A stretch of DNA of 64,000 nt from positions 248,001 to 312,000 of the IMG/VR virus record IMGVR_UViG_3300042482_000702; one strand, written 5' to 3'. The notes beneath the pieces were generated by a model that was given only the letters and a program-made list of their open reading frames with translations, was not told the DNA's origin and did no database searches. Made by a program: the position numbers and the translations under genes. This document shows positions 13,532 through 45,550 of the stretch, piece after piece. Every line of letters starts with the position of its first letter. Position 1 is the first letter of the stretch.

Positions 13532-13940
13532 GGGAGTGACACGGAATTGACTATTCGTAATAGTTATTCGGGGCACGTAGTGAGATGTTCTCTATCACTT
13601 AAATCTATGGGTACAACAATTTAGACGGAAACGTTTTAAACAAAATGGCTCTAGTAGGTCTTGTACGTCAAGATGAGCTTGTGAACGTAGCGTAAGCAAA
13701 CACACATTGGGGTCGACGGATATGTGTACCTAGCAACAGAAATATCTTAAGGTGTGATACCACCCGAAGAGTGTCAAGGTCTCGTTTGAGGGTCTACCTA
13801 TTAAAGTGAACCTCCCACAGTTGTAGGTAATGATGGAAAAATTAGAACCTTCTATTTGTCAGTTGAGAATTAACTGAATAAACGTGTAGTCCTTAATAGG
13901 TAATACAAATAACACTTGGGTTCGAGTCCCAACACTTCCA
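13532..13940 (+). ncRNA. ssrA: tmRNA
   Basis: Acceptor GGGAGTG/CACTTCC with G3-U70; 5' GGAATTGAC; T-arm TTGGG-TTCGAGT-CCCAA; internal tag ORF 13627..13695; smpB nearby. Confidence 0.92.
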
Positions 13941-14065
13941 CGTCCACTGGAGAGTCCCAACACCTCCACACAAAAAAGAGACCTAAATGGTCTCTTTTTT
14001 TATTGATAATCACCAATAAAAAAACCACCCGAAGGTGGCTTATTATCAGTTCAAATGTTTATTTT

Positions 14066-14492: not shown

Positions 14493-14930
14493 CTATTTCA
14501 AGTCCCTTTTCATATCTCTTTCGATGTCCCGAGATTTGATGGTATCTCGTTTATCGTATGTTTTCTTCCCTTTGGCAAGAGCAATTTCCATTTTAATTAA
14601 TCCGGTGTCGTTTATGAAGATACGATAAGGAACGATGGTTACACCATTGATTAACTCATTCTCCCACTTATTAAGTTCTTTTCGTTTGGCTAATAGTTTT
14701 CTATCCTTTACGGTCTCGTGGAAGGACCCAAACCCATAATCGGAGATATTCATCCCCTTTATAAATAACTCCCCCTCATTGAAATAACAATACCCTTCAG
14801 AGATGGATACCTTTCCCTGACGAATGGACTTTACCTCTGAACCAACTAGTTTGATTCCCACAATTAATGTCTGTAGGAATGAATACTCAAACTTGGCTTT
14901 CTTATTGACTATGTTAATTGAATTTTTCAT
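14493..14930 (-). CDS. smpB: SsrA-binding protein SmpB
   Basis: NKKAKFEY, GIKLVGSEVKSIR, RKLL, AKGKKTYDKR motifs. Confidence 0.97.
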   Translation of the reverse strand: MKNSINIVNKKAKFEYSFLQTLIVGIKLVGSEVKSIRQGKVSISEGYCYFNEGELFIKGMNISDYGFGSFHETVKDRKLLAKRKELNKWENELINGVTIVPYRIFINDTGLIKMEIALAKGKKTYDKRDTIKSRDIERDMKRDLK

Positions 14931-14998: not shown

Positions 14999-15883
14999 GG
15001 CTTAATACGATGAGAATACTCGTCTTATTGAGAATCTTCGGAAGGATTATTGTTTCCCTTCGTTTCCACCATCTTTTGAATGGTAACCCTCATTGCCGAT
15101 TGGTTAGACCAATCACTCCTTGAGATATCATCTACTCTCTCATTATTCAACTCTCTTTAACCTTGCGAGCTAACTCCGGATTCGACTCCGTAGAGGTTTT
15201 TGGCGAGAATACATTCAGACTTGCGGTCATCCTGTGCAACGAACGGCTCGTTACTATGTAGGCAACTTGTCGACGATACCTGGTAAACATTTTTGCTATT
15301 GTCTATTTAGTTTTTCACCATATGAAAATAGTTAATGTGTTGTGGATGTATTCAGGAAGTAGTTTACCGTAAGCTCCCTAACCTTTTGGGTTAAAGAATA
15401 CTAAACTTCCCGATGAGATATCCCTATCTCCAAATTTCAAGAATTCTTCAAATCAATATCTTGGTAGATATTTGATAGGGATAAAGTCAGCACCACCTGT
15501 TACTTAATCTTGCCTTTCGGCGTTAAGATTCCTTTTATTTTGGAACCCGCAATTATAAGGTCGGATAACCCTATTTCTTACTTGATTCCTATGGGTTCTT
15601 CTTATCTTGATTCCTCAATCAACCGGACAATCCACATTGCCAAGTTAGTATTCCATTTCCCTACGAAGTTATCCTCGGTACTACAGGACTACTAATATCC
15701 CACTTGCTTACTCGAGTTCGGTTTCCCAAACCACAAAATCACTAACACAAATGATTTCATTTTATCCCCGTTTCCGGGATTATTTAAAGATGATAAGCCA
15801 CCTATTATCTTTGATACAACACCGAAGTGTTATAATGGATAATCTAAAATTTCTAAGAACGTCTTTAAGGTTTCCCTTAATTG
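14963..15883 (-). ncRNA. Large (~920 nt) structured ncRNA, GOLLD-like candidate
   Basis: No credible ORF; own TAnnTTTG promoter (15889-15896) and terminator; many minus-strand GNRA/UUCG-capped hairpins. Confidence 0.7.
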
Positions 15884-15947
15884 TTTTACAAAGGTAAGTG
15901 ATTTTTTTCTAAAGTCAAATATTTTTGTAATTTTTTTTTAAAAAATA

Positions 15948-16041
15948 AAATGTGTTGTGTAAGCTCTACCACTGCAGCTAAACCTTGGTCACCAGGATTA
16001 CGGTTGTTGGAATCGAACCAACGACTCTACACGACACATTT
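15948..16041 (-). ncRNA. Circularly permuted tRNA mimic (YrlA/Y-RNA-like) #1
   Basis: Order is terminal helix, T-arm (GTTGG-TTCGATT-CCAAC), loop-closed acceptor-like stem, D-arm (TAGCTGCAGTGGTAGAGC), terminal helix. Confidence 0.75.
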
Positions 16042-16044
16042 ATA

Positions 16045-16136
16045 GTGGTATCAGATGGATTCGAACCACCGGCACAGGGTTTTTCAGAACCCTTGCTCTA
16101 CCAAGGAAGATAAATCTCCCACTGAGCTATAATACC
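16045..16136 (-). tRNA. Atypical tRNA-Phe-like (GAA) with a hairpin inserted in the D-loop and an irregular anticodon loop
   Basis: Acceptor GGTATTA/TGATACC, normal T-arm, D-loop insert GGGAGATTTATCTTCC, anticodon arm AGGGT-TCTGAAAA-ACCCT. Confidence 0.6.
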
Positions 16137-16147
16137 ATATAAAATAA

Positions 16148-16222
16148 TGTGGGTGTATGCTCTACCATCTGAGCTACGGATTTGAAACCGGAGGGATTTG
16201 AAACCTCGACACAACACCCACA
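16148..16222 (-). ncRNA. Circularly permuted tRNA mimic (YrlA/Y-RNA-like) #2
   Basis: GTGGGTGT/ACACCCAC terminal helix; T-arm-like GAGG-TTTCAAAT-CCCTC; CGG-loop-CCG; D-arm TAGCTCAGATGGTAGAGC. Confidence 0.7.
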
Positions 16223-16300
16223 CCATTAATTCAATGAACTTATTTTCTTCTACAAAGATAATACATTTATTTTAATCTGTCAAATCTTTTTTGATTTTTT

Positions 16301-16530: not shown

Positions 16531-16607
16531 TAGTCAGAACAGGATTCGAACCTGTGTACCCTCGTATGAGTTCGTCATACCGTGCATCTCCAATGTGCTA
16601 CCTGACT
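16531..16607 (-). ncRNA. tRNA-like RNA with non-canonical anticodon arm
   Basis: Acceptor AGTCAGG/TCTGACT and perfect T-arm ACAGG-TTCGAAT-CCTGT; anticodon arm TATGA-CGAAC-TCATA lacks U33. Confidence 0.55.
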
Positions 16608-19874: not shown

Positions 19875-20900
19875 TTACAACTTTTTAAATTCCGGTCTGA
19901 TTAAATTCCATATAATCTCGGAGTAATCCTTACGGTCAAACATTCTAAATAAAATACCTGATAAATGTTTAGGTTGTTCTGACACCCACTGAGCAAATTC
20001 TTTTCTATCTGTGATGGGTTCTTTATCGTTATACTTACCATACATTTTACCATCAAATCTTTTACCAGCATCTTCGGATATTGACATAAAAAAATATCGC
20101 AATTCTTTTACATAATTTTTAATTTTAGTGTAAAATTCATCCGGAACATCTTTTAATAATTCCATCACATCTTCACCATTTTTTAAATACTCCCAAATAC
20201 CTGTTGTAGATACATTAGTCATGATTTTGTGAAGACGCAAATATTCAATACCTTTAACCTTAACCCTATCCCCATTTGAGAACTTCACCACAAACCCCTC
20301 TTGGTCGTTTTTAACCATTTCTTTTAATTGTTTGTAGTCATTGATACCATCGTATTTTTTAACGACATCAAAACCCCATTCATCCCAATCTGTGATGTCA
20401 TAATCTTTACCCCAATTATCGAATGCTCCCAATAGGACCAGTTTCTCTTCACCTTTATAATCCAAAACAATTCTGTTTTCCGGGTAGATAATCTCAAAAC
20501 AAAATGTCATATGTCTGAACATTATGTCAGTGTTGTATTTCTGTAAGAGTTCGGTAGCCTTGATTGCTTGGTCTGATGTAAATGAACCACGAGTGGCAAC
20601 CACCCATTGACCCTGATACCAAAATACGATACCTAATGAACCATCCATTTTTTCATAAACCTCAAAGGTTTCAGTTGGAGTATATTTTCCTTCTTCTATG
20701 TTAAAGAATTTTTTGAATGGTGTTGCAACAATGTCTCCTTTGTCGTCAGTAACTAAACCTCTACACATAAGGGTCACCTCATCCCATAGGTTCTCGTACT
20801 GAACTTTTTCAGAGTAGTTCCATATGGTTAATGGAAGTGTTGGATGTACTTGTTTGTAAAGTAATCCGTCTTCGTAATATTTGTTTAGTTTTTCTAACAT
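19875..20900 (-). CDS. T4 Rnl1-like RNA ligase
   Basis: Motif I EKMDGS, KKFFN, FEII, EGFVV, VKVK. Confidence 0.9.
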   Translation of the reverse strand: MLEKLNKYYEDGLLYKQVHPTLPLTIWNYSEKVQYENLWDEVTLMCRGLVTDDKGDIVATPFKKFFNIEEGKYTPTETFEVYEKMDGSLGIVFWYQGQWVVATRGSFTSDQAIKATELLQKYNTDIMFRHMTFCFEIIYPENRIVLDYKGEEKLVLLGAFDNWGKDYDITDWDEWGFDVVKKYDGINDYKQLKEMVKNDQEGFVVKFSNGDRVKVKGIEYLRLHKIMTNVSTTGIWEYLKNGEDVMELLKDVPDEFYTKIKNYVKELRYFFMSISEDAGKRFDGKMYGKYNDKEPITDRKEFAQWVSEQPKHLSGILFRMFDRKDYSEIIWNLIRPEFKKL

Positions 20901-21038
20901 AATTTTATTTTTTCTTTTTCTTTTTTTTAATAGGTCTTTCAGGTCTTTCTAAATATCTTGGGGGTAAAGGGATTTGTCTTCCCCCTTTGAATACATTCCC
21001 ATTTCCCATCATGAGGAAGGACCAAATAAGCCACCCTA

Positions 21039-21422
21039 TCATAATTTTATTTCAAACCTATCTTTCATTTGTACTAATTTATCCTCCGGAACTCCATGTT
21101 CATTAACACCACCGTGTCTATTTTCTACAATGATGGAGAATACCTTATATCCGTATTCTTTTGCCAAGTCATAGTAAGGTTGCATCTCCCATTCCTGAGT
21201 AAATGTGTTTGATACTACCACTCTTTTGCTTTTGTTTCCCATAAAAACTCTCACAGCGTTTTGACACCAAGCATGAGCCTCTTTTAATTTAGAACCATCA
21301 AATTCGTACTTACCTTCGTAGGTAAAGTATTTATCTGCTTCCATATGCAACCCCCCTAATGATTCCGCCAATGTTGTTTTACCTGAGCCGGGACAACCAC
21401 GAACTAAAAATAATTCTTTCAT
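21039..21422 (-). CDS. P-loop kinase (polynucleotide-kinase-like, AAA_33)
   Basis: GCPGSGKTT, EAD, VVSNT, HGVP. Confidence 0.85.
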   Translation of the reverse strand: MKELFLVRGCPGSGKTTLAESLGGLHMEADKYFTYEGKYEFDGSKLKEAHAWCQNAVRVFMGNKSKRVVVSNTFTQEWEMQPYYDLAKEYGYKVFSIIVENRHGGVNEHGVPEDKLVQMKDRFEIKL

Positions 21423-21423
21423 A

Positions 21424-21705
21424 TTAATTTTTTAAATATTTTACAATCTTTTCAAATTTTTCGGTATCATCCGAATTAATAATAAACTCATCAAACGCTC
21501 CGTACCTACATTGATAACCAAAAATATATTTCAAACCATAACTAACTCTTTCCCAAAAAGGTCGTTTAGTTAAATGAGTATGGATATATACCATCGGATA
21601 TTTCACACCATCAATCTCGTCTTCATCATACATTACCACCATTTGATGTTCTGTGTTATGACAAGAACAGATGAATAAATCTTTTTGTGTTTGAGTAATT
21701 TTCAT
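21424..21705 (-). CDS. Hypothetical protein
   Basis: ORF in operon. Confidence 0.6.
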   Translation of the reverse strand: MKITQTQKDLFICSCHNTEHQMVVMYDEDEIDGVKYPMVYIHTHLTKRPFWERVSYGLKYIFGYQCRYGAFDEFIINSDDTEKFEKIVKYLKN

Positions 21706-21706
21706 A

Positions 21707-22369
21707 TTATTTTCTTTTTCGACCTTCGTCGGTTATCATATCATCTGTGTGATGGTCATCATCCATGTTTGATTTAATTTCTCTCAATTTTACAATCTTA
21801 ATAACATTGTCTAATGAGTATGGTGCAAAAAACAATGAACCATCAATACCAACATCCATTCTACGACCTTTACCAAAGATTTTACCCGTTGGGAGATGTA
21901 CATGTCCATGGAGGTGAATATGACCCTTATTTAACCCATCCCAAGAATCAATAGGGTAGTGCATTAAAACCAAAGTATCAAATTTATACATCAATTTTGT
22001 GTAGTGATTGACACTTGAAAACAATTCCTGACAATCCCCTCGGTTATTTTCAATGTGATGGTCATGATTACCCAATATAAGGTGAATCTCTTGACATACA
22101 ATTCTATCTCTAAAAATTTTCACATTTTCAAATCCGCCAAAACTCCAATCACCCAAATGAATCAAAACATCATCTTGACCAACAACACTATTAATACCGT
22201 TTACGATAGCGTCGTTCATCTCCCCAATATTACTAAAATCTCTTGTTTGAGCAATTGGAACACTCCCATCCGGAAGTCTCCATTCTGTTACACCACGACA
22301 TATATTCTTATGTCCAAAGTGAGTGTCGGATATAATCCAAACTTTTCTATCTTTATCTATCTTAATCAT
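21707..22369 (-). CDS. Calcineurin-like metallophosphoesterase
   Basis: SDTHFGH, HLGD, GNHD, HGHVH. Confidence 0.9.
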   Translation of the reverse strand: MIKIDKDRKVWIISDTHFGHKNICRGVTEWRLPDGSVPIAQTRDFSNIGEMNDAIVNGINSVVGQDDVLIHLGDWSFGGFENVKIFRDRIVCQEIHLILGNHDHHIENNRGDCQELFSSVNHYTKLMYKFDTLVLMHYPIDSWDGLNKGHIHLHGHVHLPTGKIFGKGRRMDVGIDGSLFFAPYSLDNVIKIVKLREIKSNMDDDHHTDDMITDEGRKRK

Positions 22370-22859
22370 ACTGCAAATCTAATTCTTTTTTTCCAAACCA
22401 AAAAGGTTTTTCTCTGTTTTTCCAAGACGCTAAATTAATTTTAGCACCCATATAATAATTTCTATAAGATTCCACAACAGAATCCACCTTAAACTCATCC
22501 GGCATTGCCATTGCTGGTTGAGTAAAACCAATATCCGGGATGTTAGGTCTATTTAAAATACACCATAAAACCACTTCAATTGATTTATGTTTTTTACCAT
22601 ACCTGTGGGTATATTCTTTACCTAATTCCAAACCCAATTCACACAAATACAAATAATTTGATAAACTCTGACGAGTCCATACCGCACAAGGGTGATTTTT
22701 ATGAGACAACTTGTACGGTACTTGGTCGTTAACTTGGTCGGTTACGTGATGAACCGAACATAATAATTGAGCGGTTTCCAAAATCATTTTAACTACGTGT
22801 TTATCTACGTGGTATTGAGCCGATAGTTTAGGATTCTCATCCAAGAAAAATATATTCAT
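22362..22859 (-). CDS. Pyrimidine-dimer DNA glycosylase family protein
   Basis: MNIFFLD...DKHVVKMILETAQLL...HKNHPC...EYTHRYGKKH. Confidence 0.8.
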   Translation of the reverse strand: MNIFFLDENPKLSAQYHVDKHVVKMILETAQLLCSVHHVTDQVNDQVPYKLSHKNHPCAVWTRQSLSNYLYLCELGLELGKEYTHRYGKKHKSIEVVLWCILNRPNIPDIGFTQPAMAMPDEFKVDSVVESYRNYYMGAKINLASWKNREKPFWFGKKELDLQYD

Positions 22860-23037
22860 TATTTATTTTTAAATATTACGGGACAAAGATACAACTATTT
22901 TTTTTTATTCCAAGGGATTGAACCTTTTTTTCTTCCTGTTTTTTCTATACAGATTTCATCAATTTTATCAAATTTATGATATCTCCAAATAAAACCTCCG
23001 GAACTTTTTGACTTACCTAACGAACAATAATGTTTGG

Positions 23038-23496
23038 TTATTTAATAGGTATTCGAACCCTAACACAGGTCTCAGGTTGTTTTTCATTTTTTAAGAAATT
23101 GTTAATCCAACCACAAATATTATGTGCTCCAACAGGATTTGCTGAATGAACATATATCGTTGGAAAAGTAAATTTACCGTCTTTTTTTTCATTTCTTGTC
23201 ATATTAATTCTTTCCGGAAATTCATAATAAAATTGATTAACCAAGAATTTAGCAGCATCATATCCAGTTTTCTCGTTAATATTGTTATAATCCAAAGTGT
23301 AATTTGGCGAGACATTATCAAAATACTCTTTCATAGCTGAATCACCCAAATCGTGGTCTAAGGAGATTGTGCTAATATTTTCTAACCCAATTTTATTAAT
23401 TTCATTAACAAAATCGTCGTAATCTCTTACAACAATCCAATCATCTCCGGTTGGAGTTCTTACATCATCGAGATAAATTCTACAGAGTGTTTTCAT
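23038..23496 (-). CDS. Cyclic-phosphate-processing receiver-domain protein
   Basis: YLDDVR, ISLDHDLG, TGYD, HSANPVG. Confidence 0.8.
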   Translation of the reverse strand: MKTLCRIYLDDVRTPTGDDWIVVRDYDDFVNEINKIGLENISTISLDHDLGDSAMKEYFDNVSPNYTLDYNNINEKTGYDAAKFLVNQFYYEFPERINMTRNEKKDGKFTFPTIYVHSANPVGAHNICGWINNFLKNEKQPETCVRVRIPIK

Positions 23497-34308: not shown

Positions 34309-34381
34309 TGGTCCCGGAGAATTACGATATCCCGACTTCTACATTATGAGTGTAGCACTCTAACCTCTGAGTTACGAGACC
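34309..34381 (-). tRNA. tRNA CAT (Ile2 or Met)
   Basis: Cloverleaf; loop CTCATAA; T-loop ATCGTAA. Confidence 0.8.
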
Positions 34382-45176: not shown

Positions 45177-45249
45177 TGGGGACTACCGGTTACGCTCCGG
45201 TCTCCTTGATTCTTCAGACCAATGCTTTCACTAGATTAGCTTAATCCCC
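45177..45249 (-). tRNA. tRNA-Phe(GAA)
   Basis: Loop CTGAAGA; T-loop AGCGTAA. Confidence 0.85.
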
Positions 45250-45479: not shown

Positions 45480-45550
45480 TACCTCGTGATGGTTATGCTC
45501 CACCGCCATTTGTATGTAAAACAAATACGCTCCTATTACGCCAACGAGGT
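45480..45550 (-). tRNA. tRNA-Val(TAC)
   Basis: Loop TTTACAT; T-loop AGCATAA. Confidence 0.8.

What the first reader, a model, noticed from the sequence alone, without database searches (positions are those of the whole stretch)
15948..16222. Operon of two circularly permuted tRNA mimics
In both RNAs the T-arm precedes the D-arm, the acceptor stem is closed by a loop, and the 5' and 3' ends pair where the anticodon stem would be, so they have no anticodon and no chargeable end. This is the topology of bacterial YrlA Y RNAs, which partner Ro60, but no Ro60/TROVE gene is in this window. They may be elbow-presenting decoys for host tRNA-targeting defences. A promoter at 16253-16260 would transcribe both together with the odd tRNA between them.
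Basis: partly seen in the sequence, partly recalled or inferred. Interest (0 to 1): 0.85.

Follow-up and report, generated by a model that had tools for sequence, protein, structure and literature searches.

The report
Capped tRNA mimics beside GOLLD RNA
A huge freshwater phage makes, from one promoter, two small RNAs shaped like a tRNA with its ends swapped and its tip capped, flanking an odd tRNA; they copy the tRNA-like half of bacterial Y RNAs but lack the part that binds the Ro60 protein, and they always sit just upstream of the giant GOLLD RNA.

Summary
On the minus strand a Bacteroidetes-type promoter (16284-16253) drives RNA1 (16227-16143), a non-canonical 91-nt tRNA (16136-16046) and RNA2 (16041-15948). 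Both RNAs run closing helix, T arm, capped acceptor hairpin, D arm. The Rfam YrlA model matches both end to end, below its cut-off (41 and 26 bits against 69). Phage YrlA-like RNAs that lie next to Ro60/TROVE genes score in the same range (33-45 bits).

RNA1 occurs in 27 viral contigs and 47 metagenome copies. Compensatory changes fall in the closing helix and the capped hairpin, whose loop varies freely, while the T/D core stays almost invariant.

Two features of YrlA are missing. The Ro60-binding motif is absent, and no TROVE gene lies in the window or in about 660 kb of related loci. Related huge phages do encode TROVE elsewhere, with their own Y RNAs that lack the tRNA module.

The operon lies directly upstream of GOLLD RNA wherever enough sequence is held (28 of 29 metagenome loci). 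It sits in a conserved island with tmRNA, SmpB and an Rnl1, kinase, phosphoesterase and cREC RNA-repair cassette.

Best reading: stand-alone YrlA-type tRNA-core mimics that act in trans on a tRNA-recognising factor. The partner is unknown, so this is a new variant of a known kind.

The parts
16253..16284 (-). Bacteroidetes-type promoter of the RNA operon: TTTG (-33), 20 nt, TAtcTTTG (-7)
   Evidence: The motif TTTG-N17-21-TAnnTTTG occurs 16 times in the window against 4.3 expected, 0 of 100 shuffles reaching 16. It is conserved in relatives.
16228..16246 (-). 5' leader with an invariant UUGAA and a possible small UUC...GAA hairpin. The start point is inferred, not mapped.
   Evidence: T2 T3 G4 A5 A6 are invariant in the 12-sequence alignment A2.
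16143..16227 (-). RNA1: permuted, capped tRNA-like module. Closing helix 16227-16214 with 16156-16143, T arm 16207-16191, capped hairpin 16190-16177, D arm 16174-16159.
   Evidence: YrlA 41 bits, E 2.6e-7; MFE z -3.4; two compensatory pairs in the closing helix; 44 unique variants.
16046..16136 (-). Non-canonical 91-nt tRNA. It has a 7-bp acceptor stem, a 16-nt hairpin inserted in the D loop, and an anticodon arm with an 8-nt (or 6-bp + 6-nt) loop holding an invariant YGAAA. CCA is not encoded.
   Evidence: Rfam tRNA 49.6 bits. ARAGORN's 'Pro-TGG' call lies inside the D-loop insert. Variants; fold.
15948..16041 (-). RNA2: second permuted, capped tRNA-like module. Closing helix 16041-16028 with 15961-15948 carries a conserved unpaired base at 16033. 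T arm 16022-16006, capped hairpin 16005-15981, D arm 15978-15963.
   Evidence: YrlA 26 bits, E 0.0057; the RNA1 model finds it at 32 bits, E 7e-5; 8 variants; G10-C25 becomes A-U in L005.
15940..15950 (-). U-rich run (UUUUAUUUUUU) directly after the RNA2 closing helix. It may end the operon, but it is not conserved in relatives that lack RNA2.
   Evidence: The terminator scan found nothing here.
15889..15919 (-). Separate promoter of GOLLD RNA: TTTG, 19 nt, TAccTTTG
   Evidence: conserved in all relatives.
15007..15865 (-). GOLLD RNA. The 3' domain 15007-15413 is matched by Rfam; the 5' domain is aligned with relatives. Terminator hairpin at 14998-14965.
   Evidence: RF02032 at 288 bits against a gathering score of 150; alignment A1; terminator.

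Best explanation
What it is (shown). One Bacteroidetes-type promoter on the minus strand drives a non-coding operon of three tRNA-shaped RNAs. RNA1 and RNA2 are circularly permuted tRNA-like modules flanking a non-canonical tRNA. RNA1 and RNA2 are stand-alone versions of the tRNA-like domain of YrlA-type Y RNAs. They keep the D arm, the T arm and the nucleotides that build the tRNA elbow. They replace the acceptor end with a 3-5 bp capped hairpin and the anticodon arm with a 9-14 bp terminal helix. They lack the Ro60-binding module.

How they are made (inferred). RNase P and RNase Z cut out the central tRNA. That releases RNA1 and RNA2 as discrete RNAs of about 95-105 nt whose two ends are buried in a helix. 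They can be neither charged, nor cut in an anticodon loop, nor easily attacked by exonucleases.

What they do (inferred, my commitment). They act in trans as inert mimics of the tRNA core, occupying or recruiting a protein that recognises the tRNA elbow. This would be independent of a cis-encoded Ro60. It would be part of the phage's island for keeping translation running under attack (tmRNA, SmpB, GOLLD, many tRNAs, Rnl1, polynucleotide kinase, phosphoesterase, cREC). The most plausible partner is a host tRNA-directed defence nuclease or tRNA-damage sensor, or else the phage's own tRNA-repair enzymes. The partner is not identified.
For: Topology and YrlA likeness:
-;
- TROVE-adjacent phage YrlA-like RNAs score no better with the Rfam model (33-45 bits; none reaches the gathering score).

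Shared four-helix architecture across RNA1, RNA2 and TROVE-linked copies: 96.6% of cells paired, 17 of 20 pairs with changes on both sides, 0 of 500 shuffles as good (the alignment was fitted to the model).

Pattern of variation within RNA1:
- 44 unique variants from 27 viral contigs and 47 metagenome copies;
- the T/D core is almost invariant;
- two compensatory pairs in the closing helix;
- the capped hairpin stem covaries (A-U, U-A, U.G) while its loop is free in sequence and length, with steps of 2 nt, so it is not coding.

Absence of the Ro60 module: GNCGAA-like motif in 0 of 10 RNA1/RNA2 copies against 8 of 14 TROVE-linked copies.

Absence of TROVE/DUF2828: none in the window plus 385 kb of related viral loci plus 274 kb of metagenome loci. 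By contrast 14 + 3 other phage YrlA-like RNAs sit directly 5' of TROVE or DUF2828 genes.

Promoter.

Conserved neighbourhood with tmRNA, SmpB, GOLLD and Rnl1, PNK, phosphoesterase, cREC.
Against: - There are no expression, processing or binding data. The mechanism rests on anatomy and context.
- All RNA1-bearing genomes are close relatives (about 75-95% nucleotide identity around the locus). Conservation and synteny are therefore shallow, and RNA1 is not more conserved than its flanks.
- RNA2 is dispensable: it is absent from most relatives (8 of 29 metagenome loci have it; clean deletions in L004 and L008).
- RNA1 lacks the G53-C61 pair, which is close to universal in tRNAs, so its elbow may be imperfect.
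- A mimic without an anticodon loop would not bait anticodon nucleases.
- A sponge for RNase P, RNase Z or the CCA enzyme would harm a phage that must mature more than 25 tRNAs of its own.
Confidence: 0.4

Rival explanations
1. They are genuine Y RNAs. They bind a Ro60/TROVE protein encoded elsewhere in the phage genome, or the host's Rsr, and tether it to a partner such as an exoribonuclease or repair enzyme, as YrlA does.
For: - YrlA-model scores equal those of TROVE-adjacent phage copies.
- The related huge phage LR745206.1 encodes TROVE about 180 kb from its GOLLD. Many huge-phage contigs of the clade do so too.
- In those phages the RNAs encoded next to TROVE carry Y-RNA motifs but no T/D arms, so a tRNA module encoded elsewhere would complement them.
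- L078/L177 has the same layout directly upstream of TROVE: Y-like RNA, tRNA, Y-like RNA.
- TROVE contigs L170 and L171 come from the same samples as RNA1 contigs L016 and L022.
Against: - RNA1 and RNA2 have no GNCGAAN0-1G-like motif, no UUACUUCG junction and no YUGUUCC 3' motif.
- The RNA1-bearing and TROVE-bearing contig sets are disjoint. The first includes four contigs of 308-322 kb, the second contigs of 385-483 kb.
- TROVE-bearing relatives whose GOLLD locus is held lack RNA1: L001, L006 and L013.
Confidence: 0.2
2. They are partners or cargo of the GOLLD RNA nanocage. Together with the non-decoding tRNA, these tRNA-shaped RNAs dock to GOLLD, are enclosed by it, or stay covalently attached to it through read-through transcription.
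For: - Every RNA1 locus with enough downstream sequence has GOLLD within about 0.35-1.4 kb: all viral loci with room and 28 of 29 metagenome loci.
- There is no strong terminator between the operon and GOLLD in relatives.
- The published GOLLD structure paper notes tRNAs in the GOLLD linker region and proposes encapsulation of tRNAs (PMC12286853).
- The odd tRNA carries an invariant GAAA-containing loop, of the kind that often docks into RNA receptors. That last point is my inference.
Against: - GOLLD has its own conserved promoter.
- Related GOLLD loci lack RNA1 altogether.
- The genomes are close relatives, so synteny may be mere descent.
- The GOLLD 3' domain is swapped (74% identity) between genomes whose RNA1 and RNA2 are identical, with no matching change in RNA1/RNA2.
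Confidence: 0.13
3. They work only in cis, as structural punctuation of a polycistronic non-coding transcript. On this view they are nuclease-resistant end caps, and in the case of RNA2 a terminator-like helix, that stabilise or delimit the odd tRNA and neighbouring cassette RNAs. The tRNA-like shape would be a relic of origin from tRNA genes.
For: - RNA1 is always the first element after the promoter. RNA2, when present, is the last before a U/A-rich tract.
- The island is built of interchangeable cassettes: elements A, B and C, and RNA2 present or absent.
- A normal tRNA with the same T arm exists in a related metagenome (L208), which points to a tRNA origin.
Against: - An end cap needs only a helix. 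Yet the whole T/D core, with G18G19 and UUCRA, is almost invariant across 44 variants, while the cap loop drifts.
- The same architecture is kept in unrelated TROVE-linked RNAs.
Confidence: 0.12
4. They are circularly permuted genes for functional tRNAs, or for a two-piece tmRNA, that mature by end-joining (for instance by the nearby Rnl1 ligase) and removal of the cap.
For: The gene order, 3' half before 5' half, resembles permuted tRNA genes and permuted ssrA. An Rnl1-type ligase lies 3.6 kb away.
Against: - The capped stem has only 3-5 pairs, so no 7-bp acceptor stem could be produced.
- No anticodon-loop sequence lies at the ends; the terminal helix is 9-14 bp of plain duplex.
- There is no tag reading frame and no pseudoknots. 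ARAGORN, which detects permuted tmRNAs, finds nothing.
- A complete tmRNA is already present at 13532-13943.
Confidence: 0.02

Closest known systems
YrlA (Y RNA-like A; Rfam RF02553), the tRNA-like Y RNAs of bacteria and phages (Chen et al. 2014, PMC4201824)
   Same: - Same order of elements: terminal helix, variable loop, T arm, capped acceptor-like hairpin, D arm, back to the helix.
- Same conserved tRNA tertiary nucleotides.
- Often two RNAs in tandem, as with YrlA and YrlB.
- Associated with RNA-repair genes: rtcB/rtcA in Salmonella, and Rnl1, PNK, phosphoesterase and cREC here.
   Different: - No Ro60-binding module (GNCGAAN0-1G).
- No long variable-arm hairpin or YUAY junction.
- Not encoded next to rsr/TROVE.
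- Flank a tRNA and lie upstream of GOLLD.
- Acceptor-like stem of only 3-5 bp.
Phage YrlA-like RNAs directly 5' of TROVE or DUF2828-vWA genes in IMG/VR contigs (found here; e.g. L177, L050, L118, L124)
   Same: - Same four-helix core, with strong covariation across the joint alignment.
- Similar Rfam YrlA scores.
- L177 even has the layout Y-like RNA, tRNA-Glu, Y-like RNA.
   Different: - They carry GG[CU]G[UA]AG and (G)UUACUUCG on the 5' side, often YUGUUCC on the 3' side, and an anticodon-like variable hairpin.
- They are within about 100-600 nt of the TROVE start.
- RNA1 and RNA2 have none of this.
tRNAs linked to GOLLD RNA (Weinberg et al. 2009; Kretsch et al. 2025, PMC12286853)
   Same: tRNA-shaped genes lie immediately beside GOLLD, or inside it, in phages. 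GOLLD is often near tRNA islands.
   Different: What has been described are ordinary tRNAs. Here the neighbours are capped, permuted mimics and a tRNA with a non-canonical anticodon arm.
Circularly permuted tRNA genes (Cyanidioschyzon merolae type) and two-piece tmRNA genes
   Same: The T-arm half is encoded before the D-arm half, and the acceptor strands are joined by an intervening loop.
   Different: Those mature into normal tRNA or tmRNA, with a 7-bp acceptor stem and an anticodon arm or tag frame. RNA1 and RNA2 cannot.

Membership tests
YrlA / bacterial Y RNA (RF02553) | tRNA-like domain in permuted order (T arm, capped acceptor-like hairpin, D arm) closed by a terminal helix | tested here: met
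   Direct reading; full-length YrlA model alignments; MFE fold of RNA1; covariation on A7.
YrlA / bacterial Y RNA (RF02553) | Nucleotides for tRNA tertiary contacts: U8, A14, G15:C48, G18G19, U54U55C56, A58 | tested here: met
   All are present in both RNAs. Exception: RNA1 has U.C or A.C at position 53-61. In RNA2 variants with A15 the partner stays C48.
YrlA / bacterial Y RNA (RF02553) | Ro60-binding module on the terminal helix: GNCGAAN0-1G on the 5' strand (Chen et al. 2014) | tested here: not met
   0 of 10 RNA1/RNA2 variants have it or its phage variants. 8 of 14 TROVE-adjacent phage RNAs have it at -30 to -45 nt from the T loop. The phage variants of the motif were defined after the fact from the comparison set.
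YrlA / bacterial Y RNA (RF02553) | Encoded next to a Ro60 (rsr/TROVE) gene | tested here: not met
   No TROVE or DUF2828 in the window, in 385 kb of related viral loci or in 274 kb of metagenome loci. The rest of the 322-kb contig could not be read.
YrlA / bacterial Y RNA (RF02553) | Score at or above the Rfam gathering threshold (69 bits) | tested here: inconclusive
   41 and 26 bits. But none of 17 TROVE- or DUF2828-adjacent phage loci reaches it either (33-45 bits). The threshold therefore does not separate phage members.
YrlA / bacterial Y RNA (RF02553) | Physical binding to Ro60; modification by TruB and DusA | not testable with these tools
   Needs biochemistry.
Canonical tRNA (RF00005) | Free 5' and 3' ends forming a 7-bp acceptor stem, plus an anticodon arm | tested here: not met
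   The acceptor is a capped 3-5 bp hairpin and there is no anticodon arm. Neither ARAGORN nor Rfam tRNA calls RNA1 or RNA2.
Circularly permuted tRNA gene / two-piece tmRNA | Halves that can be re-joined into a complete tRNA (or tmRNA with a tag frame) after removal of the intervening loop | tested here: not met
   The capped stem is too short, there is no anticodon-loop sequence at the ends and no tag frame.
GOLLD RNA (RF02032) | Lies within the GOLLD transcript, whose 5' domain is conserved with relatives | tested here: not met
   Alignment with L001 and L002 starts at about 15865, downstream of a separate promoter at 15919-15889. Read-through from the operon is not excluded.

The most novel reading that the evidence does not exclude
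RNA1, RNA2 and the non-decoding tRNA between them are dedicated ligands or cargo of the GOLLD nanocage. The GOLLD island would then be an RNA-only device that handles tRNA-shaped RNAs during infection, and these mimics would give the first handle on what GOLLD does.
Probability: 0.12. Interest if true: 0.9.

Novelty: new variant of a known kind. Interest (0 to 1): 0.6.

Why it matters
The function of the tRNA-like half of bacterial Y RNAs has been open since 2014, because it always comes fused to the Ro60-binding half.

Here nature provides the tRNA-like half on its own, in an abundant clade of freshwater huge phages. Related phages appear to carry the other half on its own, next to Ro60. That makes the question testable: find what binds RNA1.

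The strict placement beside GOLLD, tmRNA/SmpB and a T4-like tRNA-repair cassette links three poorly understood phage RNA systems in one island. It also suggests simple binding experiments for GOLLD, whose function is unknown.

Tried and rejected
- Rfam at gathering threshold: no YrlA call. I rejected this as evidence, because TROVE-adjacent phage copies also fail.
- The covariance model R1, built from RNA1, finds RNA2 but also junctions of tandem tRNAs. It cannot by itself define family limits.
- The generic scan for a T loop followed 11-20 nt later by a D arm returned mostly tandem tRNAs. It was useful only after sorting by hand.
- An alignment of eight TROVE proteins was too diverse for the search for related loci.
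- No k-mer or degenerate pattern common to all GOLLD copies could be found, so no catalogue of GOLLD contigs was made.
- Two attempts to decide whether RNA1-bearing genomes hold TROVE failed. The nrdA gene next to TROVE, used as an anchor, returned no RNA1 contig. The question stays open.
- Permuted functional tRNA or tmRNA: rejected on anatomy.
- Small ORFs across the region (42 aa): rejected, because loop length varies in steps of 2 nt.
- Long-range pairing between the RNA1 5' strand and the RNA2 3' strand (9 bp in the window): not conserved in relatives, so dropped.
- The three Rfam-only tRNAs at 34309, 45177 and 45480 were checked as possible suppressors. Their anticodons are CAU, GAA and UAC, so they are not.

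Full report
**Where we are.** The window is part of a huge phage.
- It holds a large terminase, ClpB, a DnaK fragment, about 25 tRNAs, a tmRNA (13532-13943, +), SmpB (14493-14930, -) and a GOLLD RNA (Rfam RF02032, 288 bits, 15007-15413, -).
- Locus L012, from IMG/VR contig 3300042482_000702 (322 kb), is identical over the region.
- The nearest named genomes are LR745206.1 (634 kb) and LR756502.1 (642 kb). These are the lengths of the largest complete genomes in Al-Shayeb et al. 2020, which place all genomes above 634 kb in the Mahaphage clade with predicted Bacteroidetes hosts (PMC7162821).
- In keeping with that host, the Bacteroidetes promoter motif TTTG-N17-21-TAnnTTTG occurs 16 times against 4.3 expected. 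It sits in front of tmRNA, SmpB, GOLLD, the tRNA arrays and the locus in question.

The minus strand reads as follows.
- Promoter: 16284-16253.
- RNA1: closing helix 16227-16214 with 16156-16143, variable loop UGUGUC, T arm, capped hairpin CGG-UUUCAAAU-CCG, U8 A9, then the D arm GCUC-AGAUGGUA-GAGC.
- A 91-nt tRNA: 16136-16046.
- RNA2: closing helix 16041-16028 with 15961-15948, T arm GUUGG-UUCGAUU-CCAAC, a 25-nt capped acceptor-like hairpin, then the D arm.
- A U-rich run, followed 80 nt further on by the GOLLD promoter.

The minimum-energy fold of RNA1 is exactly this structure (z = -3.4). RNA2 folds with the same closing helix (z = -2.6). In a permissive Rfam search the only family that fits is YrlA, matched from model position 1 to 114 in both. 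Scores are 41.0 bits (E = 2.6e-7) and 26.0 bits (E = 0.0057), against a gathering score of 69. Neither ARAGORN nor the Rfam tRNA model calls them.

**Is it more than chance?** An exact 23-mer from the RNA1 D arm finds 27 IMG/VR contigs, with 13 distinct sequence contexts. A T-arm/junction pattern finds 47 more copies in metagenome contigs, giving 44 distinct variants in all.

The variation is that of a structured RNA.
- The T/D core is almost invariant.
- The closing helix exists in two forms, GUGGGUGU/ACACCCAC and GUGGACGU/ACGUCCAC. That is two compensatory pairs, with every cell paired.
- The fourth pair of the capped hairpin is A-U, U-A or U.G.
- The cap loop drifts freely in sequence and length (6, 8 or 10 nt), which also rules out coding.

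RNA2 has eight variants.
- One shows a G10-C25 to A-U exchange in the D stem.
- All keep an unpaired base of changing identity at the same place in the closing helix.

I then aligned RNA1, RNA2 and unrelated phage YrlA-like RNAs to a covariance model built from RNA1.
- The four helices are 96.6% paired.
- 17 of 20 pairs have changes on both sides.
- No shuffle or register slide comes close.
- The alignment is fitted to the model, so it leans that way, but the margin is large.

Caveat: the RNA1-bearing genomes are close relatives, and RNA1 is no better conserved than its flanks. Within-family conservation is therefore shallow.

**What ordinary phage YrlA RNAs look like.** I ran a generic scan for a T loop followed within 11-20 nt by a D arm.
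- Most hits were tandem tRNAs.
- About 30 were RNAs with a capped acceptor hairpin.
- Their neighbouring ORFs cluster into one family of 14 that Pfam calls TROVE/vWA_Ro60, and one of 3 that it calls DUF2828/DUF7788-vWA. The RNA lies directly 5' of the gene.

None of these RNAs reaches the Rfam gathering score. Three that I scored permissively give 44.8, 33.2 and 33.0 bits. By the Rfam yardstick, RNA1 is therefore as good a YrlA as RNAs whose Ro60 linkage is plain.

These RNAs do carry extra modules.
- A GG[CU]G[UA]AG or AGCGAUA motif, a variant of the GNCGAAN0-1G motif that Chen et al. 2014 (PMC4201824) list among the conserved YrlA nucleotides and that I treat as the Ro60-binding module, lies 30-45 nt before the T loop in 8 of 14.
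- A (G)UUACUUCG junction is present in 11 of 14.
- An anticodon-like variable hairpin is present, and often YUGUUCC on the 3' side.
- RNA1 and RNA2 have none of these (0 of 10).

**Ro60.**
- HMMs built from the 10 TROVE and 3 DUF2828 proteins find nothing in the window or in 385 kb of related viral loci. They recover all positive controls.
- They also find nothing in 274 kb of metagenome loci.
- A tblastn of one TROVE protein against GenBank phages gives LR745206.1 as its best hit (59.5% identity, at 241 kb). That is about 180 kb from that phage's GOLLD.
- Forty-six TROVE loci turn up in IMG/VR. They include huge-phage contigs of 312-483 kb, two of which also hold GOLLD loci I had fetched.

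In that huge-phage class, no tRNA-like Y RNA lies near TROVE. Instead, a conserved 450-nt non-coding region between nrdA and TROVE carries the UUACUUCG and AGCGAUAG motifs without T or D arms. In a smaller-phage class with 59-60% identical TROVE, one or two tRNA-like Y RNAs lie upstream. One of them (L177, the same contig as L078) has the layout Y-like RNA, tRNA-Glu, Y-like RNA, TROVE.

The RNA1-bearing and TROVE-bearing contig sets do not overlap, although two samples contain one of each. My two attempts to settle whether RNA1 genomes hold TROVE failed. A distant Ro60 partner is therefore neither shown nor excluded.

**Context.**
- Wherever at least 900 nt of downstream sequence is held, RNA1 is followed by GOLLD: all viral loci with room and 28 of 29 metagenome loci.
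- GOLLD has its own conserved promoter. Its 5' domain, aligned with relatives, begins at about 15865.
- Upstream, the same gene order is kept in six relatives: cREC, phosphoesterase, P-loop polynucleotide kinase, T4 Rnl1-type ligase, two or three small genes, the RNA operon, GOLLD, SmpB.
- This is the T4-style kit for healing and sealing broken tRNAs. In bacteria, YrlA lies in the rsr-yrlBA-rtcBA repair operon (PMC7790460, PMC7824862).
- Between RNA1 and GOLLD the relatives carry interchangeable cassettes. RNA2 is present in a minority, and three other structured-looking elements come and go.

**The central tRNA.** It has normal acceptor, D and T stems, but two oddities.
- A covarying 16-nt hairpin is inserted in the D loop.
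- The anticodon arm has a loop of 8 nt. It can be read as 6 nt if the outer bases pair, as they can in most variants. The loop holds an invariant YGAAA.

A regular tRNA-Phe(GAA) exists elsewhere in the window. The odd tRNA is probably not a decoder. A further tRNA-like gene at 16531-16607 has a 6-bp stem and a 5-nt loop in place of the anticodon arm.

**Interpretation.**
- What is shown: a promoter-driven operon of tRNA-shaped RNAs in which RNA1 and RNA2 have the YrlA tRNA-like architecture without the Ro60 module.
- What is inferred: release by RNase P and RNase Z acting on the central tRNA, stability because both ends are buried in a helix, and action in trans through the invariant elbow.
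- I commit to a Ro60-independent tRNA-core mimic that engages a tRNA-recognising factor in the conflict over the translation apparatus (0.4).
- Rivals: a distant Ro60 partner (0.2), a GOLLD partner (0.13), a purely cis role (0.12), a permuted functional tRNA (0.02).
It remains untested and fits anticodon nucleases poorly.

**Novelty.**
- Already described: YrlA RNAs, including phage ones next to Ro60, and GOLLD's habit of sitting near tRNAs.
- Not found in the literature I could search: a module-only form, its pairing around a non-decoding tRNA, its strict position upstream of GOLLD, and the apparent separation of the two halves of a Y RNA in huge phages.
- I file it as a new variant of a known kind.

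Noticed in passing
window 15007-15865 (-): Full-length GOLLD RNA with its own promoter and terminator. Its 3' domain is only 74% identical between the window and L019, although RNA1, RNA2 (100%) and SmpB (96%) are nearly the same. GOLLD seems to be exchanged as a cassette between near-identical genomes.
   Followed up: partly
window 16046-16136 (-): The 'tRNA-Pro' of ARAGORN is a non-canonical tRNA. It has a covarying 16-nt hairpin inserted in the D loop and an 8-nt (or 6-bp + 6-nt) anticodon loop with an invariant YGAAA. It is conserved upstream of GOLLD in many relatives and is probably not a decoder.
   Followed up: partly
window 16531-16607 (-): A further tRNA-like gene (Rfam tRNA 33 bits, not called by ARAGORN). 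Its anticodon arm is replaced by a 6-bp stem with a 5-nt loop, CGAAC.
   Followed up: no
window 19875-23496 (-): RNA-repair cassette conserved in relatives: T4 Rnl1-type ligase (19875-20900), P-loop polynucleotide-kinase-like protein (21039-21422), calcineurin-type phosphoesterase (21707-22369), cREC domain protein (23038-23496).
   Followed up: partly
window 13532-13943 (+) and 14493-14930 (-): Phage-encoded tmRNA and SmpB, each behind a Bacteroidetes-type promoter, directly flanking the GOLLD island.
   Followed up: no
L025, L023, L022, L026 (relatives), between RNA1 and GOLLD: Three further cassette-like non-coding elements come and go between relatives. One of about 190 nt lies between RNA1 and the tRNA, one of about 170 nt lies after the tRNA, and one of 130-300 nt is closed by CUGUGAUAAGA...UCUUAUCACAG. 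None matches Rfam in the loci scanned.
   Followed up: no
L157-L176 (huge-phage TROVE loci), about 450 nt upstream of TROVE: A conserved non-coding region between nrdA and TROVE holds two or three Y-RNA-like elements (motifs UUACUUCG/GAUACUUCG and AGCGAUAG) but no T or D arms, and ends in a strong terminator. These look like Y RNAs without a tRNA module.
   Followed up: partly
window 34309-34381, 45177-45249, 45480-45550 (-): Three tRNAs found by Rfam but not by ARAGORN (anticodons CAU, GAA, UAC) have T loops that lack the usual UUCRA sequence.
   Followed up: partly
L001 4060-4410 and L002 3900-4020 (-): In the 634-kb and 642-kb relatives, the place upstream of GOLLD is taken by over-long tRNA-like genes with large insertions, each behind its own Bacteroidetes-type promoter.
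   Followed up: no
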